Of a stretch of DNA of 64,000 nucleotides, positions 9,286 to 45,700 are shown piece after piece (positions within the stretch are counted from its first letter, which is position 1; each line of letters begins with the position of its first letter). This stretch comes from Klebsormidium nitens (Eukaryota; Plantae; Klebsormidiophyceae): assembly GCA_000708835.1 (NCBI GenBank), contig DF237252.1, positions 1-64,000 of the forward strand. Reading direction: 5' to 3'. The position numbers and the translations under genes were made by a program. The notes under the pieces are model-generated. The model did not search any database and was not told the DNA's origin. It saw only the letters and a program-made list of their open reading frames with translations.

Positions 9286-10125
9286 TCACAACCTTGGACT
9301 GGACGGTGCCTGTTCAAATTGGCAATGAACTCTCCAATAACAAATGCCTCTGTGCTTTACGGTTTGATTGCGCATTGATCCAATTGTCCGAGGGGCTTGC
9401 CTGAAGAGGTCTGGAAGCTCAGTTGAAGCGGTTCAGAAGCTGGATTGTAGCCTCTACAAACCAGCACGGGCAATGCAAGAGGCGGACAATTGTGGCTAAC
9501 GTCAGAAGCGGAACTGGTGCTCATCGGTGGCATTGCTCATGGCGCACCCTGCGTTGCAGTCTACAGCAGCCGCATCTACAAGCTCTAACTCGGAATATGT
9601 GAGCTGTGCAATCAAACAAAATTCACCATCCTACATAAAACTGGAACTTTCTACCCAGAAACAGAGCTTTCAGCTGCCAGCTCCTTGCTTCAGCCTTGCT
9701 TCAAGTTCAACGTTTCCTTTACTGTGCCACTGCCAGAGCTTGGAGTGACCCGCGTGACCTTCCTCTTCAGACTTCAACAAGTGCTTCCAAAATACAGAAA
9801 GTCTACTAATATGATAATATTGCCTTCTGGCACCTTTTAGGTAGGCTTATGATATTTCGCCATCGAAGAAAGCTACATGCGAATTTCGCCTTGCTTGAAT
9901 TCGACTCGCTTCATAAGTGCCTGCACGGCTATAGCCCGCTATAGCCCTTGTCCATGCTATTTGTTAGGCCATTTCAAGCTTTCGGACTAGGATAGCATAG
10001 CGGCCAGCCATTCAAGAAACAAGCTCTGAAGAGTTGTACTACATAGTAGTTTGTACATGGAATCTGATCCTCGTTGCTAGAAAACTCGAAGGTGAACCCA
10101 TTGGCGCTCCGCCCCCTCTCTCAAG

Positions 10126-13100
10126 ATGGCAGAAGGGGGGGGAAAGCAGAAGCATGGCAAGGGCCGGGGCCCCGCCCCTGTGATTGCAGACCCTCGCTTT
10201 GCCAAACTGCACAGCGACCCCCGCTTTCAGAGGATCCCGCGTGGCCAGCAGAAGGTGGCCATCGATCCCCGTTTTGAGGCAATGTTCAAGGACCCTGCCT
10301 TTCAGACCAAGTTTGTGGTCGACAAGCGGGGTAGGAAGAAGAAGGGCCAGGATGCGGATAATCTGGAGAAGTATTATCGGTTGGAGAAGGGAGAGACGAA
10401 AGGTCGGAAGAAGGGTGAGGAGGAGGAAAGCAAAGATGAGGAGGTGGTTGTAGCAGAGGGCGATGAGGCTCTTCCTAACCAGGAGAACTTGGTCAAGAAG
10501 GGGTTTAGAACTGATCAGCGACGGCCCAAAAAGGGCGCCACGGAAAGTAAGGTGGAGAATGCTGTGCCACAGAAGCGGAGCGGCAGAAAGTTGCGCGAGG
10601 AGAGCGATGAGGATGAGAAAGACGGGGGGAGTGAATTTGAAAACGATAGCGATTCTGAGAGTGGTACGGATTCAGAAGCGGGACCCGGCGACCGGGATGT
10701 ACTGAGGGAAGGTTTTGGGAGCGACGAGAGTTCGTCGTCAGAGGATGATGAGGAGAGCGAGCTGGAAGATGAGGCTGAAGACAAGGTCCGTCCAGCATTT
10801 TTTTGTTTCTAGATCCTATGCTTAACTTTTTTGTAAGTTTGATCTATTCAACATGATGAAGGGGAAATTAAGTTCTGAAAGTGATGCGCCCCCGTCGTCA
10901 GCGCACCACCACCAGGAACCAAAGCATCGACCATTACCAGACTGCTTTCACTCTGTGGAATTGTGGATTGGATTTGTAAAATCCTGTGGGAGTTGTGGAT
11001 GTTTCCTTGAAGGACCAATTGAGTGACAGGGCTTGGGAGCAAGAAATGATACGCTGTAGGGCAGATTTTGGAGGCTCGCTGATCTTGAATGGGAGAATGG
11101 GCCTAAAATGTGAAGAAATTTTCTAAAGCGCTTTATGGCTCATCGGAGAAGCATAAATACAGTTGAAGCCTCTTTTCTTCGACAACCTTCCTGTGCTAGA
11201 CACAAAGCAGGGGCATCTGGATGCAGCGACCACCCTTGTGAGTAGAAGGGAAGAAATGAGTACGAACGCCAGATACAAATGCAAAGTGTTTTTTGAGGCT
11301 TCTCTAAGCTCCTTTCACTCTCTACTTGTTTAATATATTCACCATGTGGATAATAATTGTTTAGGAAGGCACAGGGGAGGACCTCCAGCTGGCGGGCACA
11401 TTGTCTGTTGTGTTCCGAAGCGTCGACTGAGAGACTTTGCAGTGCTCCGTGCACCTGCGACGTCTCAGTTTGCGCTGAATGGATCTCGGACGTCCATCGG
11501 GACTGCTTGAATGCAGCCTCAATCTTCCGGAATTGACTGGGAGCTCCAGAAGGAAGACGCTCGCAGAATTGACATGTCTCAGGTTGCAAAGTTGGCCCTT
11601 GCTGAGGGATTTGCCGCACTTATTCCATTTTTTGCAGTGGGAGGAACCTGAGAAAGTGCCTACGAGCGCCGAGGAGACCCGGAGGCTCGCGATTGTCAAT
11701 CTGGACTGGGAGTACATCAGGGTAAGTCGCCCCTCACGCGGCCGAATTGTGGTGGTTTGCAGACGTCATTGATGGCCAAACTTGCTGAGTCTGGAAGGTT
11801 TAGCCATGTGCAGCCCAGTTGCACCGAGACATGATTCCGCAGAAGGTTTTGGCCAAACAGGGCAAAACCTCGAAAAACAAAAATATTTTGCCTGGAAAAG
11901 TGACACCAAAGATTTTGCAGTCGCAGTGAACCCTTCTGCTACGTTCTCGGAAGACGTCTTACTGGCAGTCGACGTTTACTGTCTCAAGAGCCATTCCCTT
12001 AGGGTCTACGATCAGTAATGCTTACGTAAGGCACTAAAGAGAATGTTCGATAATTCGTCGCTTGAACACTTAATGACCAGATGTACGACTTTTGCAGGCA
12101 GTCGACATTCTAGTGATGCTCAAGTCATTCCTCCCCGAGAGTGGTTCTATCGAGTCGGTCACGGTCTACCCCTCCGATTTCGGGCTTGAGCGGATGAAAG
12201 AGGAGGAAGTCAAGGGGCCACAGCCGTTGTGGGGTGGGGACGCATCGGAGGAGGACGATGATGAGAGCGATGAGGACGGCGCGGGGGTGAACATGGAAAA
12301 GTTGCGGGAGTACGAGAAGTCGAAGCTGAAGTGAGTGGAGAGTTTATCTTCTCTTTTTGTGATCAAGGGTCGTAAGCTGCAGTACCCAGAAAGACGTGTC
12401 ATCGAGTCATAGAGTGACTATGACTTAAGCTGTTATCAAAGTTCGACGGCTAGTGCAGTTGTTCGTTTCAAGATTCTCTTTCGTGGCGAAGATGGATTGA
12501 TCGTAAAGGCGCTATTGCGAGGGAGTTGCATGGTTGGGAAGGTCGAAAAAGCTGAAGACGGGAAAGGAAGTCTTAAATTTGATGTAGTGGGCATGGCTTC
12601 CGGAGTCGAAGCTGGTGTGATGAGGAGAAGGCAGCTGTAGCAGGAGTTGGAGCAGGAAAGCTGCTTTTCAGAGGAAAAGGCTGCCTGGGTTAGAACTGGG
12701 CGATCAGATCCCTCTGAGTGCCCTGTAGATCTGTCCTCCTTTCAAAGGGTTGCAACATACGGAGAAGGGCAGCAGACCAACGGTGAGAAAGGAGAACGCT
12801 GCGTCCGAGGGAAGTGTGGGAGAAAGAGTCCTGTCAATGTCAAGGATGCGAACATTGCTGTGAAGTTCGTTCGTTTTGGATGTCCTGTTCAAAATGGTGG
12901 TAACACTGTTCCCTTCTGGTCCACACCATTCCGCCCAAGATATTTTCCTCTACCAGAGTTTCGCCCCAAGAACTGATACGCTGTCAGTTTGCGCGACTGG
13001 CTGGCCCCATTGGGCGTGCCCCGGTCTCAAGCTAACCCGGTTTGAGCGAGGGTGGTCAATCTTTCCGTTCCCTCGCCCTCTCTACTGGCATGGGACATTT

Positions 13101-16100
13101 GCTCGGTTTTGTTGCACGTGCAGTTTTCACCCCACTCCTTACAAAGCCGCGTGTCAGAAAAGTTCTGTCATTACTATCCAACAACCTACCGTTAGCCTGT
13201 CGTCTTACTGCGATTTGCCCGCCACTGCACACAAAGCCTCATGTATCAGAACTGGATCGTATTCCGTTCATACCCTTCTCTGATGACATTGGACCGCCTT
13301 TCCGAGGTACTCATTACGCCGTTATCTCCTGCGACGCCCCGGCCACCGCGATCTCGCTCTATGCGCTGTGCAATGGCCTCGAGTTCCAAAATTGAGTGCC
13401 TTATCCCGTCTAATTCCGTTCCGGCCCGGTCTCTTCTGACACGGAGTTCGTCCCCAGGTACTACTCCGCCGTCGTTTCGTGCAACGCCCTCACCTGCACG
13501 GCCGAGCTCTACGCGCAGTGCGATGTCCTCGTGTTCTGAAAATGAGAGCCGTATTCCGTTCCGTCCTGGTCTTTCTGACACCGGAATTGCGTCGCCAGGT
13601 ACTACTACGCCGTCGTTTCCTGTGACGCCCCCGCCACCGCGGCAGCGCTCTACGCGCAGTGCGATGGCCTCCAGTTCCAGATTCGATTGCCTTATTCCGT
13701 TCTGTTCCGTTCCGGTTCGATCTTTTCTGACACCGGACTTTCGTCCCCAGGTACTACTACGCCGTCGTTTCCTGCGACGCCCCCGCCACCGCGGCCGCGC
13801 TCTACGCCCAGTGCGACGGCCTCGAGTTCGAAAAGTCGTCAAACAAGCTCGACCTGCGGTTCGTACCGGATGCTATGAGCTTCGACGAACGTCCGAAACG
13901 AGACACCGCGACGGCCGTACCGTCCGATTACGCGGCGCCCGACTTCGAGACGCGCGCGCTGCAGCACAGCAACGTCAAGCTCACGTGGGACGAGGATGAA
14001 CCCGCGCGGCGCAAGACGCTCCGGCGCAAGTTCGGCAAGGAGGAGGTGAGGCTACTGGAATTACTCAAACTAGAAGTTGCCCGGATTCTTTTGCTTTCAA
14101 GTAGCACTGAGGTTGTGTATGTGCTGCTAATTCGGAGGATTAGATGTTTATTTGAGGGACAATTCCGCCGGTCGACGAACGAACCGTACGAGCAGTGATC
14201 TGGCTGTCTTCGAGAGAGCCCACGGCGTTATGCGTGCCGTTACCTGGATTGATGATGGTCCGAGTCTTATCAAGCAGATCTCGGTTTGTCGCCGTGATCC
14301 TCACCTCATGATTATTGCATCTTGTCACTAGGATGTATGCCTTGTATGCTCAGGTGCGTCTTGGAAAGTCTGATCTCGCGTTTCTGGGGAAGATCTTGGG
14401 GACATCATTGAGATTTTGGTGGCGGTCAAGGGCCGGTCTCGAACCTCGCTTGGCCTGCTCGCATCTGCATGGGGGCCCTTCCTGTCACCCTCGGTTATTC
14501 GCTGTGCTCTTCCGGAAACATCCTGTTCTCAGGAGGAAAGATCTTTGAAAGATTTTCGGGTTGATATGTTTCTCAGGACTGATTCCGTCTTTTCCAGGTT
14601 GACAATATGGACTTCCACGCCTACATGGCTTCGAGCGACAGCGACTCCGACGAAGAAGGCTCAGACGCCGAGCCCAGCGCTGCGGATCGGGGGGGTCAGA
14701 ACGGCAGCGGAGAGGTCCCCCCGGAGGACGACAAGAAGGCGGCGAAACTAGAGAAGCGAGAGAAGGAGCGGGAACGGCTGAGGGCGCTCCTGCTTGGGGA
14801 TGTGATGAAGACGGGAACGAAGGGAGGGGGTGAAGATGGGAGTGAGGATGAGGACGAAGAGATGGAGATTACGTTCAATACGGGGCTGAACGACCTAGGG
14901 GAAAAGCTGGAGCAGAAGAGGAAAGAGAAAGAGCAGCTGGTGGGTCCATCATCTGAGATGCTTCGGGAGAGTTGCATTTGTGTTTGACGACATTCGCGGT
15001 TCTTCTTTCCTTCCCTCTGTGCCATCTCCTTCGCGCGACGCCAGCAGCCGCAAAGAGGAAAGGAGAGCGAGCTTTGTTTTGCATGGTCGCAAATGCGGGT
15101 CGGCTTTCTCTTAAGAGCGAGCGCAGAAGGTCAGGTCGCCTCCTTCCCACCTCGTGTCGATCCTCAGGAAACCATCTCTCTTGTCTTACGTTCTGCCGGA
15201 ACCGGCTTCAGATTGCCGCTGTGCTTCGTTTCTTTGCACAGCAACGAGGTTGAGTGCATTTATCCCGCCAGGTTTTGCTTATCAACGTGTCTGCTTCTCT
15301 CGTCGAGGAAAGATTGGGTCTCCCGCATGAGAACGCATAGATTGTCTGTGTTCTCTTACGTCTTGGACGTTTCCTCTCTCTGTCTTCGGCTATCAAATGT
15401 ATCCTTTCGCGTGTTGGCCTAATTTAGGTATTATAAGGGCCAGGTATGAAAAGCTAACCACCCTGGGACGGGTGGGGTGAGTTTGGGGATTTAGAGTGGG
15501 TACGAGTGCGGAGCGTGTAATCTGTTGGGTCAGGTTTTTAGTAAGCTTTAATGTTATACCTAGCTCTTATTTTACCTAAAAAAGTCCGTCATTCCTTTCG
15601 CCGCCTTTTGCAGAAGAACGAGACCACATGGGAGGCCTACCTCCGGAAGAAGAAGGAGCGGCGGAAGGGCCGGAAGAAGGGCCCGGCAACGGACGGCGGA
15701 GACGAGTCGGACGCCTCCATCGACGACCCAGACGGCTTCTTCCAGCACGACGAGAACCCGTTCGACGACCCCTTCTTCGCGGACGACAAGCCGGCGAATG
15801 GAAAAGCGCCACGTGGCAAGGCTGAAAAGGGCGACAAAAAGACGGAACGAGAACTAGAGCGGGAGAAGAAACGGGAGGAGGCGGAGGCGGCGAAGCGGGA
15901 CGAGGCGCGGCGAAAGGCGGACCTCGAGCTGCTGATGATGGACGACGACCTGGCGTTAGCGGGGCGGTTAGGGGGCGGGTTAGAAGCGAAACCCGCGGGG
16001 TACAATCTGAAGGCGGAGCGGCGGAAGGAGAAAGAAAAGCTAAGGAAGAAGAAGAAGGGGGAGCGAGTGGATGAGGACGCGATTGAAGACGAGCAAGCGG

Positions 16101-25500: not shown

Positions 25501-28500
25501 CGGGGACTGCGCGCGCGTGCGGCAGATCCTGGCGAACCTCGTGGGGAACGCCGTGACGGTGAGCACCAAGAGCGTATGACCTTCCCGCCACAATTTGAAA
25601 AGTTGCGGGTTCGAATCTTTGAACCAGCTATACAGCCTGGTCATGGTTTTTATCTGCCGCAAAGCAACGGTAGTCATTCCAAATCTATATGTAAAAACGG
25701 AGGAGAGGAGATTAATGTGTACGGGATCCTGAAGGGCAAGGCGACAGCTCAATAAGCGAGAGGACGGATGAACGGCCGGTTGAAAGAGCTTCGCCGCTTA
25801 CATGAAGACTTACTCCTTGGATTCTTTTGGCAAAGATCGATAGGGTGAGCCGAAAAGAATAAGGAACGTTTCGAGTCCCCTTTCCCAGCTTTCCCAATGT
25901 CTCGTGAACGGGAACATGCCCGCATCGTAGGTGATTGGAAAAAACAACTTTTGCTTCTATGAGGTCTCATTTCGCTTCGCCTTGCGTCGATCCCGAAGTC
26001 CTGTACTCAACCTCAGCGCGTGTACTCTTCTCAATATTATGTACAGGCTTTTCAACACCAAGTGTAATGGTTTCAGGTTTTATCAACTCTGGAAGATCTG
26101 ACAATTGAACAACGGCCCGCGATTCCGTCCGCAGTTCACGAACGAGGGCCAGATCGTGGTCCGCGCCTCGCCGTCCGGCGCGCGCGCGCCGCGCCCCGCG
26201 CCGCGGCCCATCCTCAAAGCGCTCCGCACGATGGTCCGATCGGTGTCGCAGCGCTTCTCCAGGAGTCGACGACGCACGACCGTTCGCAGCGAAGGTTCCG
26301 GTGTCCGGCAGAGCGCGCCGCCGGAACCCCGGCAGAGCGCGTTGGCGGAATGGATTGCGGGGTATGCGAACAAGCTGAGAGCCGCGATTCTGTCCCGCGT
26401 GACGGCGGAGCAGGCGGGGAAAATCACCGTCGTCTTCGAAGTCGACGACACCGGTAAGGTTCCTTCCCTGATTGTGGCACACGTTTGAGCTCAGGACAAA
26501 TCAATGCCGCTCCTACACTCCTACTAGGAAGCGAGAGCTTCATCGCTGTTGACTGCTTTCGTACCAGGCTCCATGTGCAATTGTTCTGTGGATCTGTGCC
26601 AGGAAGGAGTACGCTGCAAAGCTTGGGTAAAGACACAGACCCCAATTGTCTGGAAATCATTTGACCTACTCTCGCCCATGTATGCCTTTGCATTCTTGCT
26701 CTCAGATTATTCCCGTTGACTACCACAAATGATGAGCGAGCCAGGGGAATATAGGAAGGGCATACGGCATGATCAGCTCTTGTTTCCCCGAAATCACTTC
26801 GCGCCTCGTCTCCCTCCCCATCACTTGATTACAACATCAAAACCTGTTGTTATAGATTCCAGGCGTTGGCATCCCCCCCAGCCGGCAGAAGGCAGTCCTC
26901 GGAAGTTTCACTTAGGGCTGCTCAGCTTGATTCGTTAACATACTCTAGATTCGCTTATTCTTGCAACTATGATCACAAACCTGTTCTTGCGTTCTCCAGG
27001 CGTTGGCATTCCTCCCAGCCGGCGGAAAGCGGTGCTCGGCAGCTTCACCCAGGGATCGCGACAGGGCGGCGGATACGGACTGGGCCTCGCGATGGTCCGA
27101 AATCTAGTCACCCTCATGCGGGGGGGGCTTCACATCGAGGACAAACAGGGGCCCGGAACTCTCTTCCGGTTCCACATAGTGCTGGAACTTCCCCCGAGCT
27201 ACGAAGAGAGCCCTTTCAGCACCCCCAAGGGGACGTTCAAGTCTAAGGCGTCGCGGCGGGCGACCGCAACCAAGACCTCGCAAGTCGCGGCGTCGCCTTT
27301 TCCCAAAGGGCCCAGCCGGAGAGCGACGGGTGTGAACACGCCCGGTGTGAACGTGCCCCAGTTCGTGCGCCAGGAGCTGTCGTTGCTGGAGCAGGTATGT
27401 CGTGACACTTCAGGGATAGTAAGCTTAAACCAAACACTAAAATTTTAACCGATCACCTGCTCCGCACCCGTACCCACCCTAAACCCCCAAACTAACCCTA
27501 CCCGTCCCAGGCCGGTGATCTTACTATTCCTAAAGCTTACTATTCCTAAAGCTTACTATTCCTAATGCGTCATTGCTTGGCGCAGGTCGAGGGGGGCACC
27601 GTCCTGCTGCTGAAGGCCGACCGCGTCGGGCGCGAGGCGGCCGCGGGCTGGATGACGCGCCGGGGGTTTAGGGTTTTGGAAGCGGAGCGGTGGGGCGGCC
27701 TGCGGCACGCGTTCCGCGTTCTGCTCGGGGGCAAGCACACCGTCTGGTTTGAGGACGAAGAGGCGGACGACCTCGCGGAACTGAGGACGGGCCAAAACGG
27801 ACGTCCGAATGGTGACGTCAGCCCAGACAGCCGCGTCCGACGTCCGTCCAGGTTTCGGCAGAGCGAAGGAGATGCGGTCCCCGGCGAGAAAGGAACTGAC
27901 AGAAACGGACGGCCGGATGGTAACGTCAGTAGCGACAGCCGCGTCCGACGTCCGTCGGCCATACGGCAAAGCGGAGGAGATCCCGCTTCCAGCGACAAAG
28001 TGACGTTAGCGGACAGTCATCTTTTCGGACAGCTTCTCGAGGGTGACAGCCGCGTCCGACCTCCGTTCGCAGTGCGGCACAGCGGAGGGGAACCCGTTCC
28101 CGGCGAGAAAGTGACGGCAGCGGACAGTCAGCTTTCCGGACAGCCTCTCGAGCGCGACAGCCGCGTCCGCCGTCCGACCGTGACAGTGACCGCCACACGG
28201 CACAGCGGCGGAGACTCCGTCCCAGGCGAGAAAGTGACGTCAGCGGGCAGTCGGCTTTTCGGACAGCCGCTCATTGGTAATTCGACCAGGCAAAGCGGCC
28301 GGGGCAAAGCCCCGGGCACATGTTTCCTGATCCTCGACACTGCGGTCGTGCCCGGTTTTCCGTCCCCCGAGGCTCTAGCCACCGCGCTGCGCTCCCTCAT
28401 GGAGGAGTACGATCCGACGGCCCCAAACGCGCCACGTGTCGTCGTGGCGTGGCTCGTCTCGTTCGCGCTGCCCGGCGCGGTCTACGAGGAGATGCGCTCC

Positions 28501-31060
28501 GCGTCCGGCTGCCGCATCATAGCGTATGACGTCCTGCACCCGTCGCGCCTGATGTCCCTCCTAACCGCTATGGTTAGCGATAACCCGAACCCGGACGTGT
28601 TGCTAGGAAGCGCGGTCCCGGCGGCGGCGGCTCCGGTCTGGTCCCAGTTTGTGCGGTCGCCGAAGAAGGCGTTCGCTTTAACGGAAGAGGAACGGCAGGA
28701 GGTGCTGATCCAATCGGGAATGGCGTTCGCCTCGACCCGCGGCGCGGTCGACGAGAAGGGGCCGGAGCGCGCAGCGGATTCCGCTCCCTCCGGCGGAATC
28801 GCTTCAAGCACAGCGGAGAGAGTCTTGTCGCAGGAGTCCACGACGACGTCAGCGACAAATGGCGATGACGTCACCGAGATCAAAGCCCCAGCGTCGCTGA
28901 CGGTTGCAGATAACCAGGCGGGGTCAATCGGGGTTAACCAAACGGGTGGCGGTAAGGAAATTGTGAGCCCGGGGAAAGAGCCGGGGGGCACGGGTTTGGC
29001 ACTTGCGGGAGTTCACGTTCTGATCGTGGAAGATACGGTCATGCTGCGGAAGCTGGCGACGACCATCCTAACTAGGGTTGGCGCGAAAGTGTTCGCAGTC
29101 GAAAACGGGCGCCAGGTGGGCTCGCCACTTCCGCCGCTCTCCATTGCGCTCTTTCAGACCTTTTCAGACTTAGTCGGAATCTCATGACGTTTAGAGTGTG
29201 GCCAAAATTGAATTGAATGCTTTGCCTCACGAGCTGAAAGGTGACAAGACACCGGTGGAAACTTCCTTAGGATCACATTTTCCGCCGGGAATCCGCTGAC
29301 CGAGTCTTGCTGTTTTGCTTCCGGTCGAGATGACTGGAAGTACAATCGCTAGAGTGCCACCCTATATTGTGTGCCGTAGCCGAAAGGGTTCGAAGCTGGC
29401 CCCAAAGTCTTTCAGTAAATCCTCAAGCCTTTAACCTTTGAAGCCTTACCTGTCTTCCCCGCTACTAATCTTTCCTCTCCTCGAAACCGCGTGAAGTATG
29501 AAACCATCGAGTGTCCAACCTCTTACACACCCGTTTCTCATTTTAGAATCCCTAGGAACCCTCATTCCCAAAACCCCGGACTTTTGCTTCTCTCCTCAGG
29601 CGGTAAACGCTGTTCTAGCCGCCATGGCTCTGCAATTGTGCACGCAAAAGGCCGCCCCCTCGCTGTCCGAGTTCGGCCCCCCTGCGGACGCTCTCGCGGA
29701 GGACCTGCGGACGTCCGGCTGCTTCGATCTAGTTCTCATGGACTGCCAGATGCCGGTGCTGGACGGCTACGGCGCCACGATCGAGATCAGGCAACTAGAG
29801 CAGGGAGAAAACGTGCACGTGCCCATCGTGGCGCTGACGGGTGAGCCCTGAAAGCCCAGGGTCAAGGTTTTTGAAGTCGGAAACTGAAACCCTAGACTTT
29901 CAGACTTGATTTGCAGCTTGAGTTGCTCTGTTGCTTCACATGTTTGCCCTATCTTGACGACGGGCAAGTTTCACGGGCTTTCTCCTGCGAGTCTTTCTCT
30001 TGTTGGTGTGGCTCGCACACACAGGTGCGGCCGAAGCGAAGTCAGCAACTAGATCGATCGACATGTTGCCAAGTACAGAGGTTCGTCTGACCAGAAACGC
30101 GTTCACTTCAAGCTCAGCGCATCAGTCTTGGTAAAGTAGAAGTTGCTGGAAGGAATTTGTTTTTGCGGGCCCAGAAGCCTTTTGAAGCGGTAAGTCGAGA
30201 ATGAATTCTCTTTTCAAGACAGACCATGCTCTTGCCCAGACCCGAACCGAAAGATTGGGAAAGCCTGACACGGCATGTCCAAGTTGTGGAGTGCAAGGGC
30301 TCATGCTGAATTATAGCGCTTTAATTTGTGCAGCCCACGCCATGGCGACAGACAAGGAGAAGTGCCTCAGCGTTGGGATGGATGGGTAAGACCGCGAAGT
30401 TTTCAGTGCTTTGATCGCCCGTCAGAGGTTGGAAAAAAGACGTGCTGAATCTAAACCTAGATTGCTGATCTGTTTCCCCGCCCGATTGCCTTCCAACAAC
30501 GGTGCCTTCCAATTCGCCGCCGAGAACCTGAGACGACCGCTTTCGGTTGGCGCGCTAGACGGTGTTCGAAAAACGTTTCTTGTTCCAGCCTCTTGATTTC
30601 TTCGAGGATGTTTGTATCCCTGTTGGTTGGGGGATTTCAGCTTGACCAGCTTTCAAAAGCCTTTCATTGCCATTATGAATCTCAGGCGGCACATCTTGTG
30701 ACACTTTCTGAGCCTGTTTGTCGACGAAGCTCAGCTTTGGTTCAGAGGCTTTCTTGGTCACTACGTTGCCAGGCTTAATTGAATCATGCTTTTTGTCTTG
30801 AAAACTGCGTACATCCTGTAGTCGTACTCGGTCGACGATTCCGTTGCTTCCTTTACTGGCTTCTCGTTCAAGAAGCCCTCGGAATGATCCTAGTGCTCAA
30901 CGCGCTGAGTGCTCAAGTCGATGGCATCCATCTTGATTCCGACCTGTATGAAACTTGACTTTTTGAGACTTTCCTGACCAGGTACCTGACAAAACCAATC
31001 AACGTGCCCTTATTGGTCAGCACCATAAGGAGCTTCGTCAAACGGGAAGCGCCCACATGA
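19505..31060 (+). CDS. Hybrid sensor histidine kinase 1, AHK1/CKI1-like (TM, extracellular Cache-like region, TM, HisKA, HATPase_c, receiver), ~1455 aa
   Basis: 14 phase-consistent exons: 19505-19657, 20371-20619, 21444-21755, 22034-22262, 22877-23070, 23737-24019, 24886-25010, 25352-25558, 26135-26453, 27000-27394, 27586-29115, 29600-29840, 30334-30385, 30982-31060. Motifs: FLAAMSHDVRTP, QILANLVGNAV, FEVDDTGVGI, GYGLGL, VLIVEDT, DLVLMDCQMPVLDGY, PIVALTAHAM, GMDGYLTKPI. Confidence 0.93.
27397..27578 (+). mobile_element. MITE copy B, filling almost the whole of HK1 intron 10 (27395-27585)
   Basis: 182 bp, starting atgtcgtgacacttcagg and ending cctaatgcgtcattgctt. Flanked by ggagcaggt (27388-27396) and ggcgcaggt (27579-27587), an 8/9 match. 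The 16-bp subterminal unit cttactattcctaaag occurs three times at 27520-27567. Confidence 0.9.
27826..28275 (+). repeat. Coding tandem repeat in HK1: four 36-40 aa units starting DSRVRRP
   Basis: gacagccgcgtccg starts at 27826, 27934, 28045 and 28156 (spacing 108, 111, 111 nt), all in frame within exon 11. Confidence 0.9.
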
Positions 31061-34800: not shown

Positions 34801-37800
34801 TCGTGCGCGAGACCCTTGGCAGCGAGGGACGCCGCCTCTTGTTTGGCCTGGAAAAGCGGGGTTAGCGAGTCTTCTTTGGTCTAGAAAAGCGGGGTTAACG
34901 AGTCGGTCTGGAAAAGCAGGGTTAGCGGGTCTTGTTTGGCATGGCAAACCAGGAATAGCAAGTCTTCAATGGCCTGGTCAACCGGGGTTAGCGAGTAATC
35001 AGCCTCGCAAACGGGTACAGGATGTTCATGTGGATTAGAATGAACGGAACGAGCGTGATAGTTGAACGTCATTGGATGTTGTCTAGGTTTAAAGTCACTG
35101 AGCGAGGTGGAAACGAAATGTAGAAGTTTGAACATGGTTTGACCGTAGTACTAAATGGTCCAATCAAGAGGCAGACTAGTATAGAGTCAGTCGGAATTGA
35201 TGCCTTTTTAGACAAGGCGTCCGTTAGCAGCTTTGAAAGCCTTGAACATAACACACAAGATTCGCCAACGCCTGCGGTCAGAATATCCGTCCGAGGACCT
35301 GGAACCGGGCTAATCGGCTTTAGCTTTGCAAACACAATTTGACTGATTTGATTTCCTCTTCAGAGAGCTTCTCGAGTTAGTCGTCACCTGTACACACTCC
35401 CTGTGCGCCGTCTCCAGCGTAACTTTCATTGTCGTCGTCCATTCCTCCAGCCGCAAGTTTGCCGCCTCTAGTTCTTGCACCCGGGCTCTGAGCTTCTCGA
35501 CGAGGACGCTGTTCGCAGCGCCATTTTCCTGCGCTCCACAAGAGAAGGAACGTGAATTCAACACCCATAATAAGGAAAGTCCAGCGTTTACCGCTTAGAT
35601 TGGAGACTGTTGACCAGTGTGCTGGAATTCTTCGCTTACCCAAATTTTGCGGAAATTGGATACGCGCACTAATTCTTCAAAGACAAGCGGAGCTGTATCA
35701 AGTGTGTGGACGACATCTTTCCCAAGCAAAGCTTGTCAAAGCTTGCTTTATGCCAGGCTCGGTCTCCAGTTTCTGCGGACTCGACGTCACATGTGCCCGT
35801 CCCTTTCAAGCTTACCGGACCGAGACCCCGTCAAACGGCCGTCACTATTCTGACGCGGTCCGTTTTACGTGCAACTTCTATCAGATATCAACACCCACTG
35901 TGAAGAGCCTCCAAACGAACACGGTCAAGATCCACAAGTTCATGTCGTGACACTTCAGGACTAGTGAGCTCAAGGAATAGTAAGCTCAAACCAAAGACTA
36001 AAAACCTAACCTAATAAAATTACCTGCTCCGTACCCGTAACCACCCTAAACCCCCAATCTAACCCTACCCGTCCCAGGCTGGTAATCTTACTAATCCTGA
36101 AGCTAACTACTCCTGAAGTGTCAATGCATCACAAGTTCCTGTATCTCACCTGTTGCTGCCGAAAGAGCTCCAGAACGCTCTTCAGCCGCTGCAACTGGCC
36201 TATGTACTGCGCACTTTCCTCATCCACTTCTGCGGTTTCTTCCTCTTCCGCTGCGCCTTGCAAGGTGCAGTGCAGGTCATTCAATTCCTCGTCGTGGTGA
36301 CCCTTCCCGCCCCTTTTCTTCTGCTTCTCTGCTTGCTGTGCGTTCAGCAATTGCTGAGACTTCAGGTCCTCCAACTGCATAAGTGCAAAGAGCCTGGCGT
36401 GAGGAATTATTACAGGAGCGGAGGGGGAAAGCTTATGGCGCCTGCCCTGCAACATACTGGAAGAGAGATTTGCAAACGGTTACGAACAGTCTGCCGGACT
36501 GTGGACCATATTCATCCTGAACCACTTTGTCGTACTCCTTTGTTTCTCCCACAACATTCAGGCAGGTTTTCAGCAAGTCGAAATCTACGAAGAACCACTT
36601 TCTCAGTCGGATCACCGCAGTAAACCAACCCCCAGCCTCATCCTCAATCACTCTCCAAAACCCCTTGACAAGCAATGAATCTTAGTTCTACCAGGTAGCA
36701 TCAGAAAAGATAATCATAGGCTTGCGTCTAGTAATCTGAAAATGCCGCCAGCGCTCAGTTTCCACTCATCCACCAGTCTCCTCATGACTTTCTCCAAGGA
36801 GCGTACCTGCTTGCCGAGCAAGTGCAGGTCTCGCTCCCTCCGCTGCTTCTCCTGCTTGACCCTGGTGGCTGCTTCTTTGGTCTCCAACAGCTCCTTGCGC
36901 AGCGCCGCTATCTCCTCAGCAAGGCTCTCCTTGTCTCGATTTTCCAGGCCCTTCAGCAGGCTCTTGTGCGCTCTGTTTGCAGAGTTGTCGTGCTCCCTGC
37001 ACAGAAAGGGACAGCTCGCACACTTCGTATCTTGTTGCGCAACTCTTACTCGATCATTTGATACCAATGCATGTTTTGAGTGTTGAGAACAAAGGAGTGA
37101 ATCAGTGTGCAGGTGTCGTTGAATGTGCTGCAGGTTGTTGGTAGGGCTTTCGTATGTCTCCAAGCGCCTACAACCTGGTAGTTTGCCAGGTTTCAAGGTT
37201 TTTTGAGTAACAGTCAGCGTCGAGTGCATGCAAAACATATGCCACCGTTGCTATCACAGGACAATGGCATAGTCTCGGCATACCTGCAAAGAGTATGTTA
37301 ACTTTGAGTTGAATCAAATGCAAGCCTTCCGTCCTTCAAACACAGCCAACATGTGAATCGTTCTTCATGCGGGAGAGCTCGTTGTCTCCTAGCAGCTCAC
37401 CTGATTGGGAGCTCAGCAAAAGCAAACTTTGGGCCAGCTGGTCTTGGTGGTGGAATCCCCTTCACAGGCTGGGGCACAGCGCTCCGTGGACGAATGCCTG
37501 GCTTGAAACCCTTAGAATGCTGCATTCTGCTCATGCAAAACCCCTTCAATTTGATCAGACAGGAATGCTGTCTGATTGATCAGAGGAGCCAGCAGACTGG
37601 CCTCAGAAGACTCTAGCTTGCAGAGCTACCTACTTAGCTTGGGCATGCACTGCTATGTATTTTTTGGAACTTGGCACGCCAACCCAGCTGTAAACCTGTT
37701 TGTCCGTGAATCAACGCTGCAGGCAGGTCCCGAAATGCGCCTTGCATCATGGCGTAAGTCCTCATGCACTGTTGGTGAACTAGGTATGTCGGACGTCGAC

Positions 37801-39745: not shown

Positions 39746-42700
39746 TCAAGTAGCCGCCTCCCGCTTGACGAAGCTCTTGATGGTGCTCACCAGCAACGGC
39801 ACGTTGATTGGTTTCGTGAGGTACCTGATCGCAAAAGGAAGCAACGTAGGAACCAAGCTTTGAAAGGGCCTACGCAGGGATACGATGGTCAAACAGGTTG
39901 TATTGTCCAGTTGAGAGCGTGATTACATATGAACGAAAAGCGGAGGGGACTTGGGCTGTGATAAGGTCTTCTTAGATGTAAAGATTCAAGCCGGTGGTGT
40001 GCTCGCTGAAATCCTATATGCTTTTCGTTGAACCAGTGCTCTGACCAAAAGCCTTCTGATGCCGCTATAATTCTGATGCCGCTATTATCGCTATTAAGTC
40101 TCTGAACGATATGGACGCCACTTTGAATTCTGATTGCATCGCTGAATCATTGGTTGCCACAAGCTTGCCTAGGATGCAGACCTGCTGAATCTGCCTTGAA
40201 GGCAACATCAGTCCAACATATCCTGGGGCGAAACAGCTCCAAGAATCGGCAGGACAAACAGCTAGCAACCAAGCCTTGACGAGCAGGTTCGTGGATCGCA
40301 GGCAGAAAAGCGGGGCGACAAATTGCGGTCTCACCCGTCCATCCCGACGCCGAGGCACTTCTCCTTGTCCGTGGCCATGGCGTGCGCTGCACAAATTCCA
40401 TGTAAGCGTTTCATAAGGTTTGCCTTTGTCATAAGTCGCCCTCCAGGCGTCTTGTGTCAGCGAAGCGGCTCTTCAAACTTCTCGCCCCGAGGGAAGCGAG
40501 GACCCACGAGGCGGGTCGGCTTCCAGACCTTGGCTTACAGGCCCTGATTCCCATATAGTACATCTGTTCGTTCAAATCCCACCCGAAGAAGGGTGAACGG
40601 CCGGACTCGAGCTTCTCGAGAGGGCCTTCAGGCCAAAGTCAGAAGGATGTTTCCAAGCTGAGGTCGAACGGCCTCTTCCTCTCTTCTGCGCGTTCACGCT
40701 GCCCGTTCATGTTTCTGCAAGTGAACGGTTTACGACCTGTAAAACAGCGTGGCAAAGTCAAAAGCAAACGCTGCCGCTTTCAGGGCTCACCCGTCAGCGC
40801 CACGATGGGCACGTGTACTTTTTCGCCCTCCTCTAGTTGCCGGATTTCGGTGGTTGCGCCGTAGCCGTCCAGCACCGGCATCTGGCAGTCCATGAGAACT
40901 AGATCGAAGCAGCCGGACGTCCGCAGGGCCTCCGCGAGAGCGTCCGCAGGGGGGCCAAACTCGGACAGCGAGGGGGTGGCTTTCGGGGCGCCCAGCTGGA
41001 TCTCCATCGCAGTCAGGATAGCGTTGACCGCCTGAGAAAAAACAGGGACCCAGCTTATTGAATGAGATGGTTCGACGGAGGGACCCGAGCTTGGACACAC
41101 CACCTCACCACACTGTCTCGTGTCTGTCGTTGGCCTTCGAAAGTTCGATTTAAGAAAGTAAAGAGCAGGGCAGTTTGAACGTGTTCGATTGAAGGACATC
41201 GTAACATAACCTTGTCAGAAGATACAATCAGGCGGGCAGCTCCTGTTGGCGTCTGGCACAGTCTTTCAAGCGCCAAGGACCAAATCTGGTAACGCTACTT
41301 ACCAGATACTTTGCAAGCATTTGAGATTCGAGACAGACATACGGGACCGTAAAACATTTGAGACGCATCTGACCAACGTACAAGCACTGCACCGATTATC
41401 GCGGGTGACGTATTAAGTGGGGAGGCCGCCCCAAAATTCATCTACTCCTCCTCGAAACTGACGTTGTTCCATTCTCTAGTACAAGTGAGCTTCTTTCACT
41501 TTGGGAGCTTCAAATGTCAAGGCAGATGCTTCAATCCTCCAACCAGAGCCTCAAAACCTTCGAAAGACAAGGGATCTTTACTAGACCAGAAAACCCACCT
41601 GCCGCCCGTTCTCGACCGCGAAGACTTTCGCGCCAACCCTGGTAAGGATGGTAGTCGCCAGCTTCCGCAGCATCACCGTATCCTCTACGATCAGAACGTG
41701 GACCCCCGCCAGCGCCAGGTCCGCTCCCCCGGGCTCATGCCCGGGGCTTACTATCTCCTTTGGCTCACCCTTAGGAACCGGGTTACGGATAACTCTTGAT
41801 ACTGGCTGTAGAGTAGAGGTTGCTCTGATTCCCGTAACGCCGTTTGCAATCGGGTTGGGTATCCGCGGGAGACTGTCAGCGGCCTTCACGCTGAAAGAGT
41901 TTGCAGACGCGGCTGGATTGGCCGTGCTGTCCGGCCCCTTCTCATCGACCGCGCCTCGAGTCGAGGCGAACGCCATGCCCGCTTGGATCATGAGCTCCTC
42001 CCTCTCCTCTTCGTTCAAAATAATTGATCTCTTGGACTTTTGTACCTTCTTGGACGCCTTGTTGGAGAGCACCGGAGGCGCGGCTGGGAGCGCACTCCCC
42101 AGCAGCGAATCCGGGTTCGGATTATCGCTAACCATGGCGGTTAGTAGGGATAACAGGCGGGACGGGTGGAGGACGTCGTACGTGATGATGCGGCAGCCGG
42201 CGGCGCAGCGCATCTCCTCGTAGATCGCGCCGGGCAGCGCGAACGACACGAGCCACGCCACCATGACACGTGGCGCGTTCACGGCCGTCGGATCGTAGCC
42301 CTCCATGAGCGAGCGCAGCGCGATGGAGAGCGCCTCGGGGGAGGGGAAACCGGGCACGACCGCAGTGTCCAGAATCAGGAGAATGGGCCCCTGTGAAGTG
42401 CCCCGGTCAGTCTGATCGCGGTCGAGGAGCTGTCCGAAGAGCTGGTCGCCCGCTGACAACACGCTCTTGCTGGACATCTCGTCCGTCTCGCTGCTCCTTA
42501 TTTCGGACGGCCTTCGGACGGGGCCACCCTGGCTAGCTTTATTGATGGGTCCTATTGATGGGTCCGCATCCGCGTCCAGCCCCTCGGTGGAACTCCGGAC
42601 GGTCTTCCCGAGCAGACGCCGGAACGTCTCCCGCAGCCCGCCCCACCGCTCGGCCTCGTAAACCCTCAAATGTCGGCGCGCCATCCAGGCCGCGGCCGCC

Positions 42701-45700
42701 TCGCGCCCGACGTAGTCCCCCTTCAGCAGCAGGACGCTGCTTCCCTCCAGCTGAGGGAGCAAGGAAACCTCTTGGCGCATGTAGTCGGTCGTGCTGACGT
42801 TAGACCCGGCGGACGGCCGCGGCGCGACGCGCGCGGTCTTGCGCCCGGCTAGCCGTTCCCCGAAACCTCGGGGCGCCCCTTTGGGTGTAGCTATGGGTGT
42901 AGGGCAGTAGCTCGCGTTCGCGTCCTGCTCGGTGGAATGCTCCGGGGAGAGTTCGAGAGTGATGTGGAACCGGAAGAGGCTGCCGGGCCCCTGTTTGTCT
43001 TCGATTCGGATGGCGCCCCCCATGATTGCGACCAGGTTCTTGACCATCGCGAGGCCCAGGCCGTACCCGCCGCTGTGCCGCGAGCCCTGGGTGAAGCTCC
43101 CGAGCACCGTCTCCCGCCGGTTGGGGGGGATGCCGACGCCTAGACATAGGAGAACAAGGTTATTAAGCATAGTGGAAACGTGTGACGAATAGGAAATAAT
43201 TTGTAAAAGCGGTGACGTGAGCCCTGGGTGGAGCTCCCGAGGACCGTCTCCCGCCGGCTGGGGGGGATCCCCACGCCTGGAAAGTGTAAGAACAAGGTCT
43301 GTAAGCATTGTGGAAACATGTGACGAGAAACTTATGGCGGAGCAGGTGAACAAATAGGAGCACCAAGTAGGAGCACAAGGTATTCTGGAAGAATAGCTGT
43401 GACGGTATGTAATGAGAGAGGTGGTAGAAGAGTGTTCTGACGAAATAGGTGCCACTGTGCGGATCAATTCCGTGGTTCCGAAGCTACTTTGTCACCTCAA
43501 ATGGCACGCACATTTGGAGATTCTCATGAAGAAGAACGCAAGCTAGCTCTCGCGAACCGTGACTCCATTTTGTAACCTGCAGCCTGTAAGTAATCGCGAG
43601 TAACAAGCAACTCACCGGTGTCGTCGACTTCGAAGACGACCGTTATGTTTCTCGACCGCTCCGCCTTCCCGCCGGGCAGTATGACCGCTTTGAGCTTGTT
43701 TGCATACTCCGCGATCCAAGTGGATAGTCCGCTGTCTCGAGGGCCTTCGTCGCCGGACGACGCGCGGACCTGGTTTAAGCTCAGCTTCCTCGACACCGTT
43801 CGCGCCAACGTGCGTAGCACTTTGGGGAGCGGCTTCGGCGAGCTTGGGGCGCCTTGCGACCCGGAGAGATATGCGCGGACCACGATGTGGCCTTCGTGTG
43901 TGAACTGCAGAGAGGATCATCAATAATATCAGGCTTCACCAGAGTTTCGATGCTCCAACCTTGCTGGAGATGAGTCGGCTTTGGCCTGCGCACAAAGCGT
44001 TTGAATCGAAGGGGAAAGCTACGATAAATGGCACCTTTTCACAGATCCACAGCTTTGGCGATCACAATTGCTCATTTCTTATGATTGAGTGAAGGCGATC
44101 ATGGCCCCATAGTAGTCTCGTGAAGGTCCTTCACATAGGAGGGGAGAGAGTATATGCCCAGAGACTCACCGTCACGGCGTTCCCCACGAGGTTCGCCAGG
44201 ATCTGCCGCACGCGCGCGCAGTCCCCGACGACCCTGCGCGGCAGGCAGTCGTCCAGGTCGAGAGCTAGAGCGACATTCTTTTTGGCGCACTGCACCGCGA
44301 ACATGTCCACCAGCGCCTCCAGCTCCTGGCCCAGATCAAACGGGCCCGTCTCCAACGTCAGCTTGCCGGTCTCCACCTGGATGTCCACGTCAACCAACGT
44401 CAGCGTCCGCAAGTAAGCGCAGGGGACGCGGCCGAAGTCCGCGGAAGGGACATCTTCCGAAAGCGTCGAAAGCGTTGTTGAGACATGGTAATGAGATAGG
44501 CGAAGCAGCTCGGTTTTGCCGGTTAAGAGGATGCAGGATCTCTACGCCGCCCTGCAAATGTACCTGAGAGTGCCGATTTCATTTTTCTCGATGATACTTT
44601 AGTAACAGCATCTCCCTTTAGCAGGTTGATTGGACGCGAGTTTGGGGACCAGGAATTATTATGGGCCCGTGGAATAGTTGTCAGGTAGCTGCAAGGCAAA
44701 ACCTACGGCGCATTCTTTCACGGCCGCAAAATGCAACGCGGCGGCATTGCTCCAAGAATGCCAGACGTGCTGCTCGCGCTTGCATACTATTGACTCACCT
44801 TTCGAGTAGAGCACAAACCGGAAAGATAGGTATATGAGCATCGACTTCTGGTTTGAGGCAGAGTCGCTTTGAACACCAAAGTCGACTGTCTAGAAAGATG
44901 CTCCACGAAGATCGAGATTGTGACTTTCTAGTTTAATAGTAGAAGGCCTGCAATCTCGATTGCAGGAGCCACCAAAACCGCCCGAGCGAGCAGCCTTCCG
45001 CTAAGGACAGCTCACCTTGGACAGGTCGAGGATGGATTTGAGGAGGTCCAGCAGCTGCAGCGCGCAGAGCCGGACCTGCTTCAGACTGCTGCGCTGCTCG
45101 TTCTGCAACCGACTGTCACCCAGCAGCACCTCCAGCAAGCCTGAAACGAATATACGTTCATGTGAGATGTTGAAGGATGAGGGTTCAGTACAAGATTCGT
45201 TTGAGATGTTCAAAGATAAGGGTCGAGTGCTCAATACGAAGAGGCCATGCAGTTCCAGAAAAGAAGGGCTGTGCTGCTCGTATGGCAACCGACTGTCGCT
45301 AAGCAGCCTTGCCAGCAAGCCTGGAGTAAGTCTAGATGTGCGACAGAGGCTCGGAGCTTGAGAATGTTGCTTGCTCCTTTAATCACATGACACCCTTATT
45401 TTCGGCACAATCTGCTGCCGAAACATTGGAGTCTAAAACTGTAAGGTCCAACGGCGAGATGAGCACCTGAGATCTCTCTAGAGCATCGAGTGGAAGTCTG
45501 GACACGCTTCAGTCGCTCTTTGCTTCAGAAAAGAAGAGGCGACATTGAACTTCATCTGGCGCCAAATGTTTTCCGTGCACCGATTGATCAACATCTTTTC
45601 GACGTTAGCTGATTGGATTCCCTCCACCTTACCTGCTTCCGCCTTAGAGGCAGAGTCATGCGACTCGTCGAGTTGCCGAAGCACACTTAAACAAAAAGTT

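What the first reader, a model, noticed from the sequence alone, without database searches (positions are those of the whole stretch)
27388..27587. Introner-like intron gain: a 9-bp-TSD MITE forms a complete new intron in HK1 that the paralog HK2 lacks
Seen in sequence: HK1 reads FVRQELSLLEQ|VEGGTVLLLKAD across a 191-nt intron, while HK2 reads YMRQEVSLLPQLEGSSVLLLKGD with no intron. This is the only intron-position difference found between the paralogs. The intron is GT + a 182-bp TIR element + ggcgcAG. The left TSD copy (ggagcaggt) supplies the donor and the right copy (ggcgcaggt) supplies the acceptor, so splicing restores exactly one TSD copy and the reading frame. The right TIR also carries a CTAAT branch-point-like motif ~20 nt before the AG. 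Established: DNA-transposon introners that co-opt TSDs as splice sites are known (e.g. in Micromonas and Aureococcus), and 9-bp TSDs typify Mutator elements. Inference: this is a recent, transposon-made intron in a streptophyte, possibly from an undescribed introner family.
Basis: partly seen in the sequence, partly recalled or inferred. Interest (0 to 1): 0.92.

Follow-up and report, generated by a model that had tools for sequence, protein, structure and literature searches.

The report
Transposon insertion that became an intron
A 182-bp mobile element landed in a coding exon of a Klebsormidium nitens histidine-kinase gene, and the 9-bp duplication it made supplies both splice sites, so the cell splices it out exactly: a clean example of a known way of making introns.

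Summary
Window 27397-27578 is a 182-bp MITE flanked by a 9-bp target-site duplication (GGAGCAGGT / GGCGCAGGT). Five other copies, two in the window and three at a paralogous K. nitens locus, confirm the family; four of them have perfect 9-bp duplications.

The intron (27395-27585, 191 nt) is exactly GT + element + GGCGCAG and nothing else. RNA contigs from three runs skip exactly these 191 nt. The public K. nitens protein model also reads ...SLLEQVEGGTV...

A 3.3-kb genomic DNA contig from a related species (about 91% identical) carries the orthologous exon with an empty site. It also keeps part of the upstream intron, so it is not cDNA. HK2, a third paralogue and four or five more distant homologues also lack an intron here. 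The other 11 intron positions are shared.

This is therefore a true intron gain by transposon insertion, made after the split from that relative. Three claims are not shown:
- Membership of a real "introner" family. Only 1 of 6 copies seen forms a whole intron, and a published survey lists K. nitens without introners.
- Mutator affiliation.
- Great recency.

The mechanism is already described in other algae, so this is a new member of a known kind. First readers flagged one similar, unchecked case elsewhere in this genome.

The parts
27000..27394 (+). HK1 exon part upstream of the new intron (end of the HATPase_c domain and a linker); ends ...CTG GAG CAG
   Evidence: RNA contig joints 26452>26999 and 27390>27582; translation; 100% match to the annotated K. 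nitens protein P0153
27388..27396 (+). Left copy of the 9-bp target-site duplication, GGAGCAGGT. Its last two bases are the intron's GT donor
   Evidence: boundary fixed by the identical terminus of copy 2
27395..27585 (+). The new 191-nt spliceosomal intron: GT + 182-bp element + GGCGCAG. If retained it adds 17 codons and then a TAA stop at 27446-27448
   Evidence: Skipped in RNA contigs of runs X1, X2 and X3. Absent from the DNA contig of a related species in X29. Open frame ends at 27445
27397..27578 (+). 182-bp MITE. Left terminal repeat 27397-27414; C-rich telomere-like core about 27451-27515; three 16-nt subterminal repeats 27520-27567; degenerate right terminal repeat 27561-27578
27579..27587 (+). 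Right copy of the target-site duplication, GGCGCAGGT (one mismatch). Its AG at 27584-27585 is the acceptor and its final GT is exonic
27586..29116 (+). HK1 exon part downstream of the new intron (receiver-like region up to the start of the receiver domain)
   Evidence: RNA contig piece 27582-29116 with 0 differences; translation
42715..42783 (-). Homologous site in the paralogue HK2, uninterrupted (…SLLPQLEGSS…), inside one 514-codon exon 41599-43140
   Evidence: 100% match to the annotated protein P0154
35933..36138 (+). Second copy of the same MITE (element 35942-36129, 188 bp) with a perfect 9-bp duplication CACAAGTTC. It appears to lie inside a larger intron of a minus-strand gene, 20 nt from a GTGAG donor
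15402..15601 (-). Third copy (element 15411-15592, 182 bp) with the same core but different termini. Perfect 9-bp duplication GCGAAAGGA, 12 nt upstream of a putative plus-strand acceptor

Best explanation
A non-autonomous terminal-inverted-repeat DNA transposon (a MITE of a family with roughly a thousand copies and 9-bp target duplications) inserted into the large ninth exon of the hybrid histidine-kinase gene HK1 of Klebsormidium nitens. The target was GGAGCAGGT, within CTG GAG CAG GTC.

The duplicated 9-mer contains AG|GT. The upstream copy therefore offers a GT, and the element's first bases ATGT extend it to CAG|GTATGT. The downstream copy offers an AG, preceded by the element's pyrimidine-rich subterminal repeats with CTTAC and CTAAT motifs.

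The spliceosome removes 2 + 182 + 7 = 191 nt. This leaves exactly one copy of the 9-mer, so the mRNA and protein equal the pre-insertion state and the insertion is tolerated.

Shown: the element and its duplication, the exact splicing, the empty site in a relative, and the absence of the intron in all paralogues and outgroups.

Inferred: which motif serves as the branch point, the transposase superfamily, and that this was a chance hit on an AGGT-containing target rather than the work of a specialised intron-making element.
For: - Sequence anatomy.
- Family membership: an identical 18-nt terminus and a second copy with a perfect 9-bp duplication. A third copy and two copies at K. nitens locus L001 also have perfect 9-bp duplications.
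- Copy number: the summed contig depth of the core is about 940 times the single-copy flanks in the organism's own DNA run, and about 3,300 times in a relative (a crude measure).
- Splicing: one 2.4-2.5-kb RNA contig in each of three runs removes this intron together with two neighbouring GT..AG introns. The annotated protein P0153 reads SLLEQVEGGTV.
- Empty site: a 3,307-nt contig from DNA run X29 lies on 26958-27391 and on 27583-28700, skipping the 191 nt. It includes about 41 nt of the upstream intron, so it is genomic.
- Polarity: HK2, P0002 (L001 exon 9577-11171, contiguous), P0001, P0151, P0003, P0004 and P0152 are all uninterrupted at the site. The tree shows three paralogue clades plus outgroups, and only HK1 is interrupted.
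- Atypical features: the intron is 191 nt with a GTATGT donor, against 366-924 nt and GTRAG in most of the 11 introns of the paralogue.
Against: - The duplication has one mismatch, and the right terminal repeat matches copy 2 at only 13 of 18 positions, so the insertion is not very young.
- No contig of the organism's own DNA run covers the right junction. Depth is 0 at 27571-27631 in X25, although the left junction is covered with 0 differences.
- The runs are labelled 'RNA?' and 'DNA?' (guessed). Their nature is inferred from which introns their contigs keep or lack.
- Logan contigs drop rare variants, so partial intron retention cannot be excluded.
- The empty site in the relative could in principle reflect a precise loss there.
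Confidence: 0.9

Rival explanations
1. The MITE belongs to a true introner family. On this reading, its termini (ATG...CAT next to the duplication) and its GTAAGC / GCTTAC subterminal repeats are adapted to be spliced, and it has created many introns in Klebsormidium.
For: - The element's first bases complete a good donor after a duplication ending in GT. Its arms carry a donor-like GTAAGC on the left and branch-point-like CTTAC/CTAAT with pyrimidines on the right, in either orientation.
- The family has about a thousand copies.
- First readers noted one other MITE-shaped in-frame intron in this genome (s1-285644). That note is unchecked.
Against: - Only 1 of the 6 copies examined forms a whole intron. 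Four appear to sit inside larger introns (two checked against an exact gene model, two inferred from sequence) and one lies downstream of a stop codon.
- The survey in PMC9860276 required at least 4 introns similar up to both boundaries. As I read the unlabelled columns of its table, it lists Klebsormidium_nitens without introners.
- With about 1,000 random insertions, a handful of AGGT-target exon hits is expected by chance (my estimate).
Confidence: 0.12
2. The intron is ancient. A MITE later inserted into it, and HK2 and the other homologues lost the intron.
For: Four of the other five copies of the family seen here appear to lie inside pre-existing introns, so such insertions are common.
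Against: - The intron holds nothing except the element and the duplicated bases. Both duplication copies straddle the exon borders.
- An orthologue about 91% identical has the empty site.
- At least three independent precise losses would be needed on the tree.
Confidence: 0.02
3. The insertion predates the split from the related species (organism B), and B lost it by precise excision or precise intron loss.
For: The family is present in B at high copy number, so it was active before or around the split. The HK1 copy is somewhat degenerate.
Against: Excision of such elements normally leaves a footprint, and a footprint here would damage the exon. It needs an extra event. Either way the intron is still a transposon-made gain on the HK1 branch.
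Confidence: 0.06

Closest known systems
Introner elements of Micromonas pusilla and Aureococcus anophagefferens (Huff, Zilberman and Roy 2016, cited from my own knowledge and through PMC9860276 and PMC11282704)
   Same: Short MITE-like DNA transposons with terminal inverted repeats and target-site duplications. Their insertion into exons yields a spliceable intron that leaves the mRNA unchanged, and the duplication is co-opted as a splice site.
   Different: Those elements carry one splice site themselves and have made hundreds to thousands of introns. Here neither GT nor AG comes from the element, and only one intron is shown.
Florenciella-type introners (PMC9860276, Fig. 2E as described in its text)
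   Same: Both splice sites are recruited from the insertion site or duplication, not from the element.
   Different: That is a prolific family in a marine stramenopile. Here it is a single event in a streptophyte alga, from a MITE most of whose examined copies are not introns.
AGGT-duplication model of intron gain, and Ds/Ac elements spliced as introns in maize (Rogers 1989; Giroux et al. 1994; my own knowledge, not checked here)
   Same: Two copies of AG|GT flanking inserted DNA give a donor and an acceptor whose use restores the original reading frame.
   Different: In the duplication model the copies arise by tandem duplication of host sequence. Ds splicing in maize is usually imprecise and uses sites inside the element.
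Land-plant introners reported in Panicum virgatum and Salvia splendens (PMC12130899)
   Same: Transposon-derived introns within Streptophyta.
   Different: Those were found as families of similar introns. Klebsormidium is not mentioned in that paper's text.

Membership tests
MITE (non-autonomous TIR DNA transposon) | Terminal inverted repeats | tested here: met
   24-nt arms, 83% complementary. The 18-nt terminus is identical in two copies and recurs inverted with 3 mismatches.
MITE (non-autonomous TIR DNA transposon) | Target-site duplication of fixed length at independent copies | tested here: met
   9 bp at five copies: four perfect and one 8 of 9.
MITE (non-autonomous TIR DNA transposon) | Many copies, small size, no coding capacity | tested here: met
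   182-188 bp. Three copies in 64 kb and three in the 17-kb locus L001. Core depth is about 10^3 times single copy.
MITE (non-autonomous TIR DNA transposon) | Empty site in a related genome | tested here: met
   A DNA contig of run X29 skips exactly element plus one duplication copy.
Introner family (as defined in PMC9860276) | Insertion creates an intron that is spliced so that the mRNA is unchanged | tested here: met
   RNA contigs in three runs; annotated protein P0153.
Introner family (as defined in PMC9860276) | At least four introns in unrelated genes similar to each other up to both exon borders | not tested
   No whole-genome search was possible. 1 of 6 copies seen is a whole intron. 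The published table lists K. nitens as negative. One unchecked lead exists (s1-285644).
Mutator / MULE superfamily | 9-11-bp target-site duplication | tested here: met
   9 bp. However, 8-9-bp duplications also occur in other superfamilies (my knowledge).
Mutator / MULE superfamily | Autonomous partner with the same termini encoding a MuDR-type transposase | not testable with these tools
   The terminus occurs only in the two MITE copies in the window. The genome could not be searched.
Intron gain by AGGT duplication | Direct repeats containing AG|GT at both intron borders, with splicing that leaves one copy | tested here: met
   GGAGCAG|GT ... GGCGCAG|GT; the joint has a 6-nt ambiguity.

The most novel reading that the evidence does not exclude
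This roughly thousand-copy, 9-bp-duplication MITE family, in its several terminal-repeat subfamilies, could be a low-rate 'facultative introner' of Klebsormidium. Its ATG... termini and its GTAAGC/GCTTAC subterminal repeats would make any insertion into an AGGT-containing exon target spliceable. It would then have seeded a set of short introns of about 190 nt across the genus. That would be the first introner family in a streptophyte alga, missed by the 2022 survey.
Probability: 0.12. Interest if true: 0.7.

Novelty: new member of a known kind. Interest (0 to 1): 0.5.

Why it matters
Individual intron gains for which every step can be read are rare outside the few lineages with prolific introners. 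Here the donor element, the duplication, the empty site in a relative and the exact splicing are all visible.

This case shows that, in a close algal relative of land plants, an ordinary MITE can create a working intron in one step. It needs only a target that contains AGGT.

It gives a natural substrate for testing what a new intron minimally needs. Because the element family is abundant, it also makes the rate of such events in Klebsormidium measurable.

It does not change the current picture of how transposons make introns.

Tried and rejected
- Metagenome scan for more copies. I scanned for an 18-nt core motif, hoping to run an 'excise and restore the reading frame' test. It returned 55 loci, but BLAST showed similarity only at the seed, so they are chance matches.
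- Close HK1 orthologues by protein search with the downstream exon. Only HK2-like, P0002-like and distant fragments came back. The orthologue was found through DNA runs instead.
- RNA folding of the intron. There is no unusual stability (z = -1.3), and the minimum-free-energy fold does not pair the terminal repeats. A hairpin that brings the splice sites together is therefore not supported.
- Literature. No paper in the library links Klebsormidium with introners or MITE-derived introns. PMC12130899 has no supplementary files held.
- Checking intron positions in distant streptophyte kinases (P0007, P0008, P0011, P0013) was dropped as unnecessary once the empty site in the orthologue was found.
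- A genome-wide census and a search for the autonomous partner could not be done with the collections on offer.

Full report
**What is in the sequence**

At 27394/27395 the HK1 reading frame (…FVRQELSLLEQ) stops at CAG|GTATGT. It resumes at 27586 (VEGGTVLLLKAD…) after …GGCGCAG|.

Between these points lie 191 nt. The central 182 nt (27397-27578) have inverted ends, a C-rich telomere-like core and a 16-nt subterminal repeat. That repeat is present three times on the right and once, inverted, on the left.

The 9 nt before the element (GGAGCAGGT) and the 9 nt after it (GGCGCAGGT) match at 8 of 9 positions.

**The element boundaries are not a matter of taste**

A second copy at 35942-36129 begins with the identical 18 nt, ATGTCGTGACACTTCAGG. 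One search found 3 matches in the window against 0.03 expected by chance. This copy is flanked by a perfect 9-bp duplication, CACAAGTTC.

A third copy (15411-15592, minus strand) shares the core but has other termini. It has a perfect duplication, GCGAAAGGA.

Three more copies of the core lie in a paralogous K. nitens locus (L001). Two of them have perfect 9-bp duplications, CCTGACCAG and GCCGGAAGC.

With the boundaries fixed in this way, an 8-of-9 match at the HK1 copy has a chance probability of about 1e-4 (my arithmetic). The element is therefore a MITE with 9-bp target-site duplications. The intron is exactly GT (from the left duplication) + element + GGCGCAG (from the right duplication).

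**Organism and genes**

The annotated Klebsormidium nitens proteins P0153 (1362 aa) and P0154 (1316 aa) were found with the paralogue P0002 as query. In tblastn, their exons match the window at about 96-100%, many at 100%. The window is therefore K. nitens, and HK1 and HK2 are its two convergently oriented hybrid histidine kinases.

P0002, the third paralogue, has HisKA, HATPase_c and Response_reg domains. P0153 reads …SLLEQVEGGTV…, so the public gene model already treats the 191 nt as an intron.

**Is it spliced?**

RNA contigs of 2.4-2.5 kb in each of three runs (X1, X2, X3) lie on HK1. They skip 25558-26133, 26453-26998 and the 191 nt, all with GT..AG ends.

The joint at the new intron has a 6-nt ambiguity. 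That is the part of the duplication shared by both sides, as expected if splicing leaves exactly one copy.

Retention would add 17 codons and then a TAA stop at 27446-27448. The protein therefore depends on this splicing. Logan contigs drop rare variants, so some retention cannot be excluded.

**Gain or loss?**

- **Anatomy.** The intron contains nothing but the element and the duplicated bases, and both duplication copies straddle the exon borders. An old intron later hit by a MITE would not look like this.
- **Homologues.** HK2 (41599-43140, a single 514-codon exon) and the third K. nitens paralogue P0002 are uninterrupted at the site. The exact spliced map of P0002 gives exon 9577-11171 of L001. 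The fragments P0001, P0151, P0003, P0004 and P0152 are also uninterrupted. P0001, P0003 and P0004 were fetched and lie on contigs with separate exon-like ORFs. The contigs of P0151 and P0152 were not inspected.
- **Tree.** There are three paralogue clades (HK1; HK2 + P0001; P0002 + P0151) and an outgroup. Only HK1 carries the intron.
- **Other introns.** The other 11 intron positions are shared by HK1, HK2 and P0002 at tblastn resolution.
- **Empty site.** In DNA run X29, from a differently labelled related organism, a 3,307-nt contig lies on 26958-27391 and then on 27583-28700, about 91% identical. It skips exactly the 191 nt. It also aligns to about 41 nt of the upstream intron, which the RNA contigs splice out. 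It is therefore genomic DNA, not cDNA or a processed copy. This is an orthologous empty site.
- **The organism's own DNA.** In run X25, a contig runs without a single difference from the exon across the left duplication to 27481 inside the element. The insertion is therefore real in reads. No X25 contig covers the right junction, as often happens at repeats in short-read contigs.

**How it works**

The 9-bp target contained AG|GT at its 3' end. After duplication, the left copy's GT abuts the element's first bases ATGT, giving CAG|GTATGT. The right copy's AG is preceded by the element's pyrimidine-rich right arm (CTTACTATTCCTAAAG in three copies, then CTAAT 20 nt before the AG).

Splicing from the first GT to the second AG removes 2 + 182 + 7 nt and restores CTG GAG CAG GTC. 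The branch point is inferred, not shown.

The new intron looks unlike its neighbours. It is 191 nt with a GTATGT donor. The 11 introns of the paralogue are 366-924 nt, mostly with GTRAG donors.

Folding gives no sign that pairing of the terminal repeats matters.

**How it compares with what is known**

Transposon-made introns (introners) with inverted repeats and duplications co-opted as splice sites are established in Micromonas, Aureococcus and many other lineages. PMC9860276 explicitly describes families in which both splice sites come from the duplication or insertion site (Florenciella). The mechanism is therefore known.

That survey found none in land plants. As I read its supplementary table, it lists Klebsormidium_nitens as surveyed without introners. 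The columns are unlabelled, and my reading rests on known introner species scoring 1 in the second column. Its criterion was at least four introns similar up to both borders.

PMC12130899 later reports introners in some land plants. Its main text does not mention Klebsormidium.

I found no paper linking Klebsormidium to such introns.

**Is it an introner family?**

This is not shown. Of the six copies I could read, one is a whole intron, four appear to sit inside larger introns and one is downstream of a stop codon.

The family is abundant. The summed contig depth of the core is about 940 times the single-copy flanks in K. nitens, and about 3,300 times in the relative. This is a crude measure that the tool itself warns is not a copy number.

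About 2% of random 9-mers contain AGGT. If roughly a fifth to a quarter of the genome is coding, a thousand insertions should give a handful of spliceable exon hits by chance (my estimate). One such event, or a few, is what an ordinary MITE would produce.

First readers of this scan flagged one more MITE-shaped in-frame intron on another piece of this genome (s1-285644). I could not check it.

**Age and superfamily**

The insertion postdates the split from the relative in X29. It is not brand new, because the duplication has one mismatch and the right terminal repeat matches copy 2 at only 13 of 18 positions. The copies differ by 13-17%.

A 9-bp duplication fits Mutator-like elements, but not only them. 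No autonomous partner could be sought.

**Verdict**

The interpretation as a transposon-made intron gain is supported by transcripts and by an empty site. It is a new, unusually well-documented member of a known kind, of moderate interest.

Noticed in passing
window 35933-36138 and 15402-15613; L001 4487-4701: Three of the four copies that appear to lie inside larger introns are within about 12-20 nt of a splice junction. Copy 2 is 20 nt after a GTGAG donor. Copy 3 is 12 nt before a putative acceptor. The L001 copy is 17 nt before the acceptor of intron 2. The fourth is about 43 nt from an acceptor. The sample is small, but this is more than uniform placement in introns of about 550 nt would give.
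   Followed up: partly
window 15411-15592; L001 4487-4684 and 12846-13029: Copies share a C-rich, telomere-like core (…CCCACCCTAAACCCCC…CCCGTCCCAGG) and 9-bp duplications but have unrelated terminal repeats. This suggests several subfamilies built around one core.
   Followed up: partly
window 27416-27424: The left arm holds ATA|GTAAGC, which resembles the usual local donor. Its use would add 24 nt (8 in-frame codons, no stop). By inverted-repeat symmetry the right arm holds GCTTAC, which is branch-point-like. No RNA contig uses the internal site.
   Followed up: no
window 27552-27578: Compared with copy 2, the right end of the HK1 copy differs at 7 of 27 positions. Five of those changes are to T, which raises the pyrimidine content just upstream of the acceptor. 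This could be drift or could be tuning after the insertion.
   Followed up: no
window 26840-27036: The start of this exon and its acceptor region are duplicated about 137 nt upstream. One contig of DNA run X25 'goes back 137' there, and tblastx shows the same duplication in HK2. This is the subject of another first-reader note.
   Followed up: no
DNA run X44: A run with the same species label as the window's organism holds many copies of the MITE core. It holds essentially nothing of the HK1 flanks at 85% likeness or more. It may be a divergent strain, a mislabelled culture or a filter gap.
   Followed up: no
L003 (JGI metagenome 3300060284) and L004-L006 (Logan SRR14092358-60): Environmental and other genomic contigs carry homologues of this kinase family, 40-49% identical. 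The equivalent of this exon is one uninterrupted ORF in each. They contain no copy of the MITE core.
   Followed up: partly
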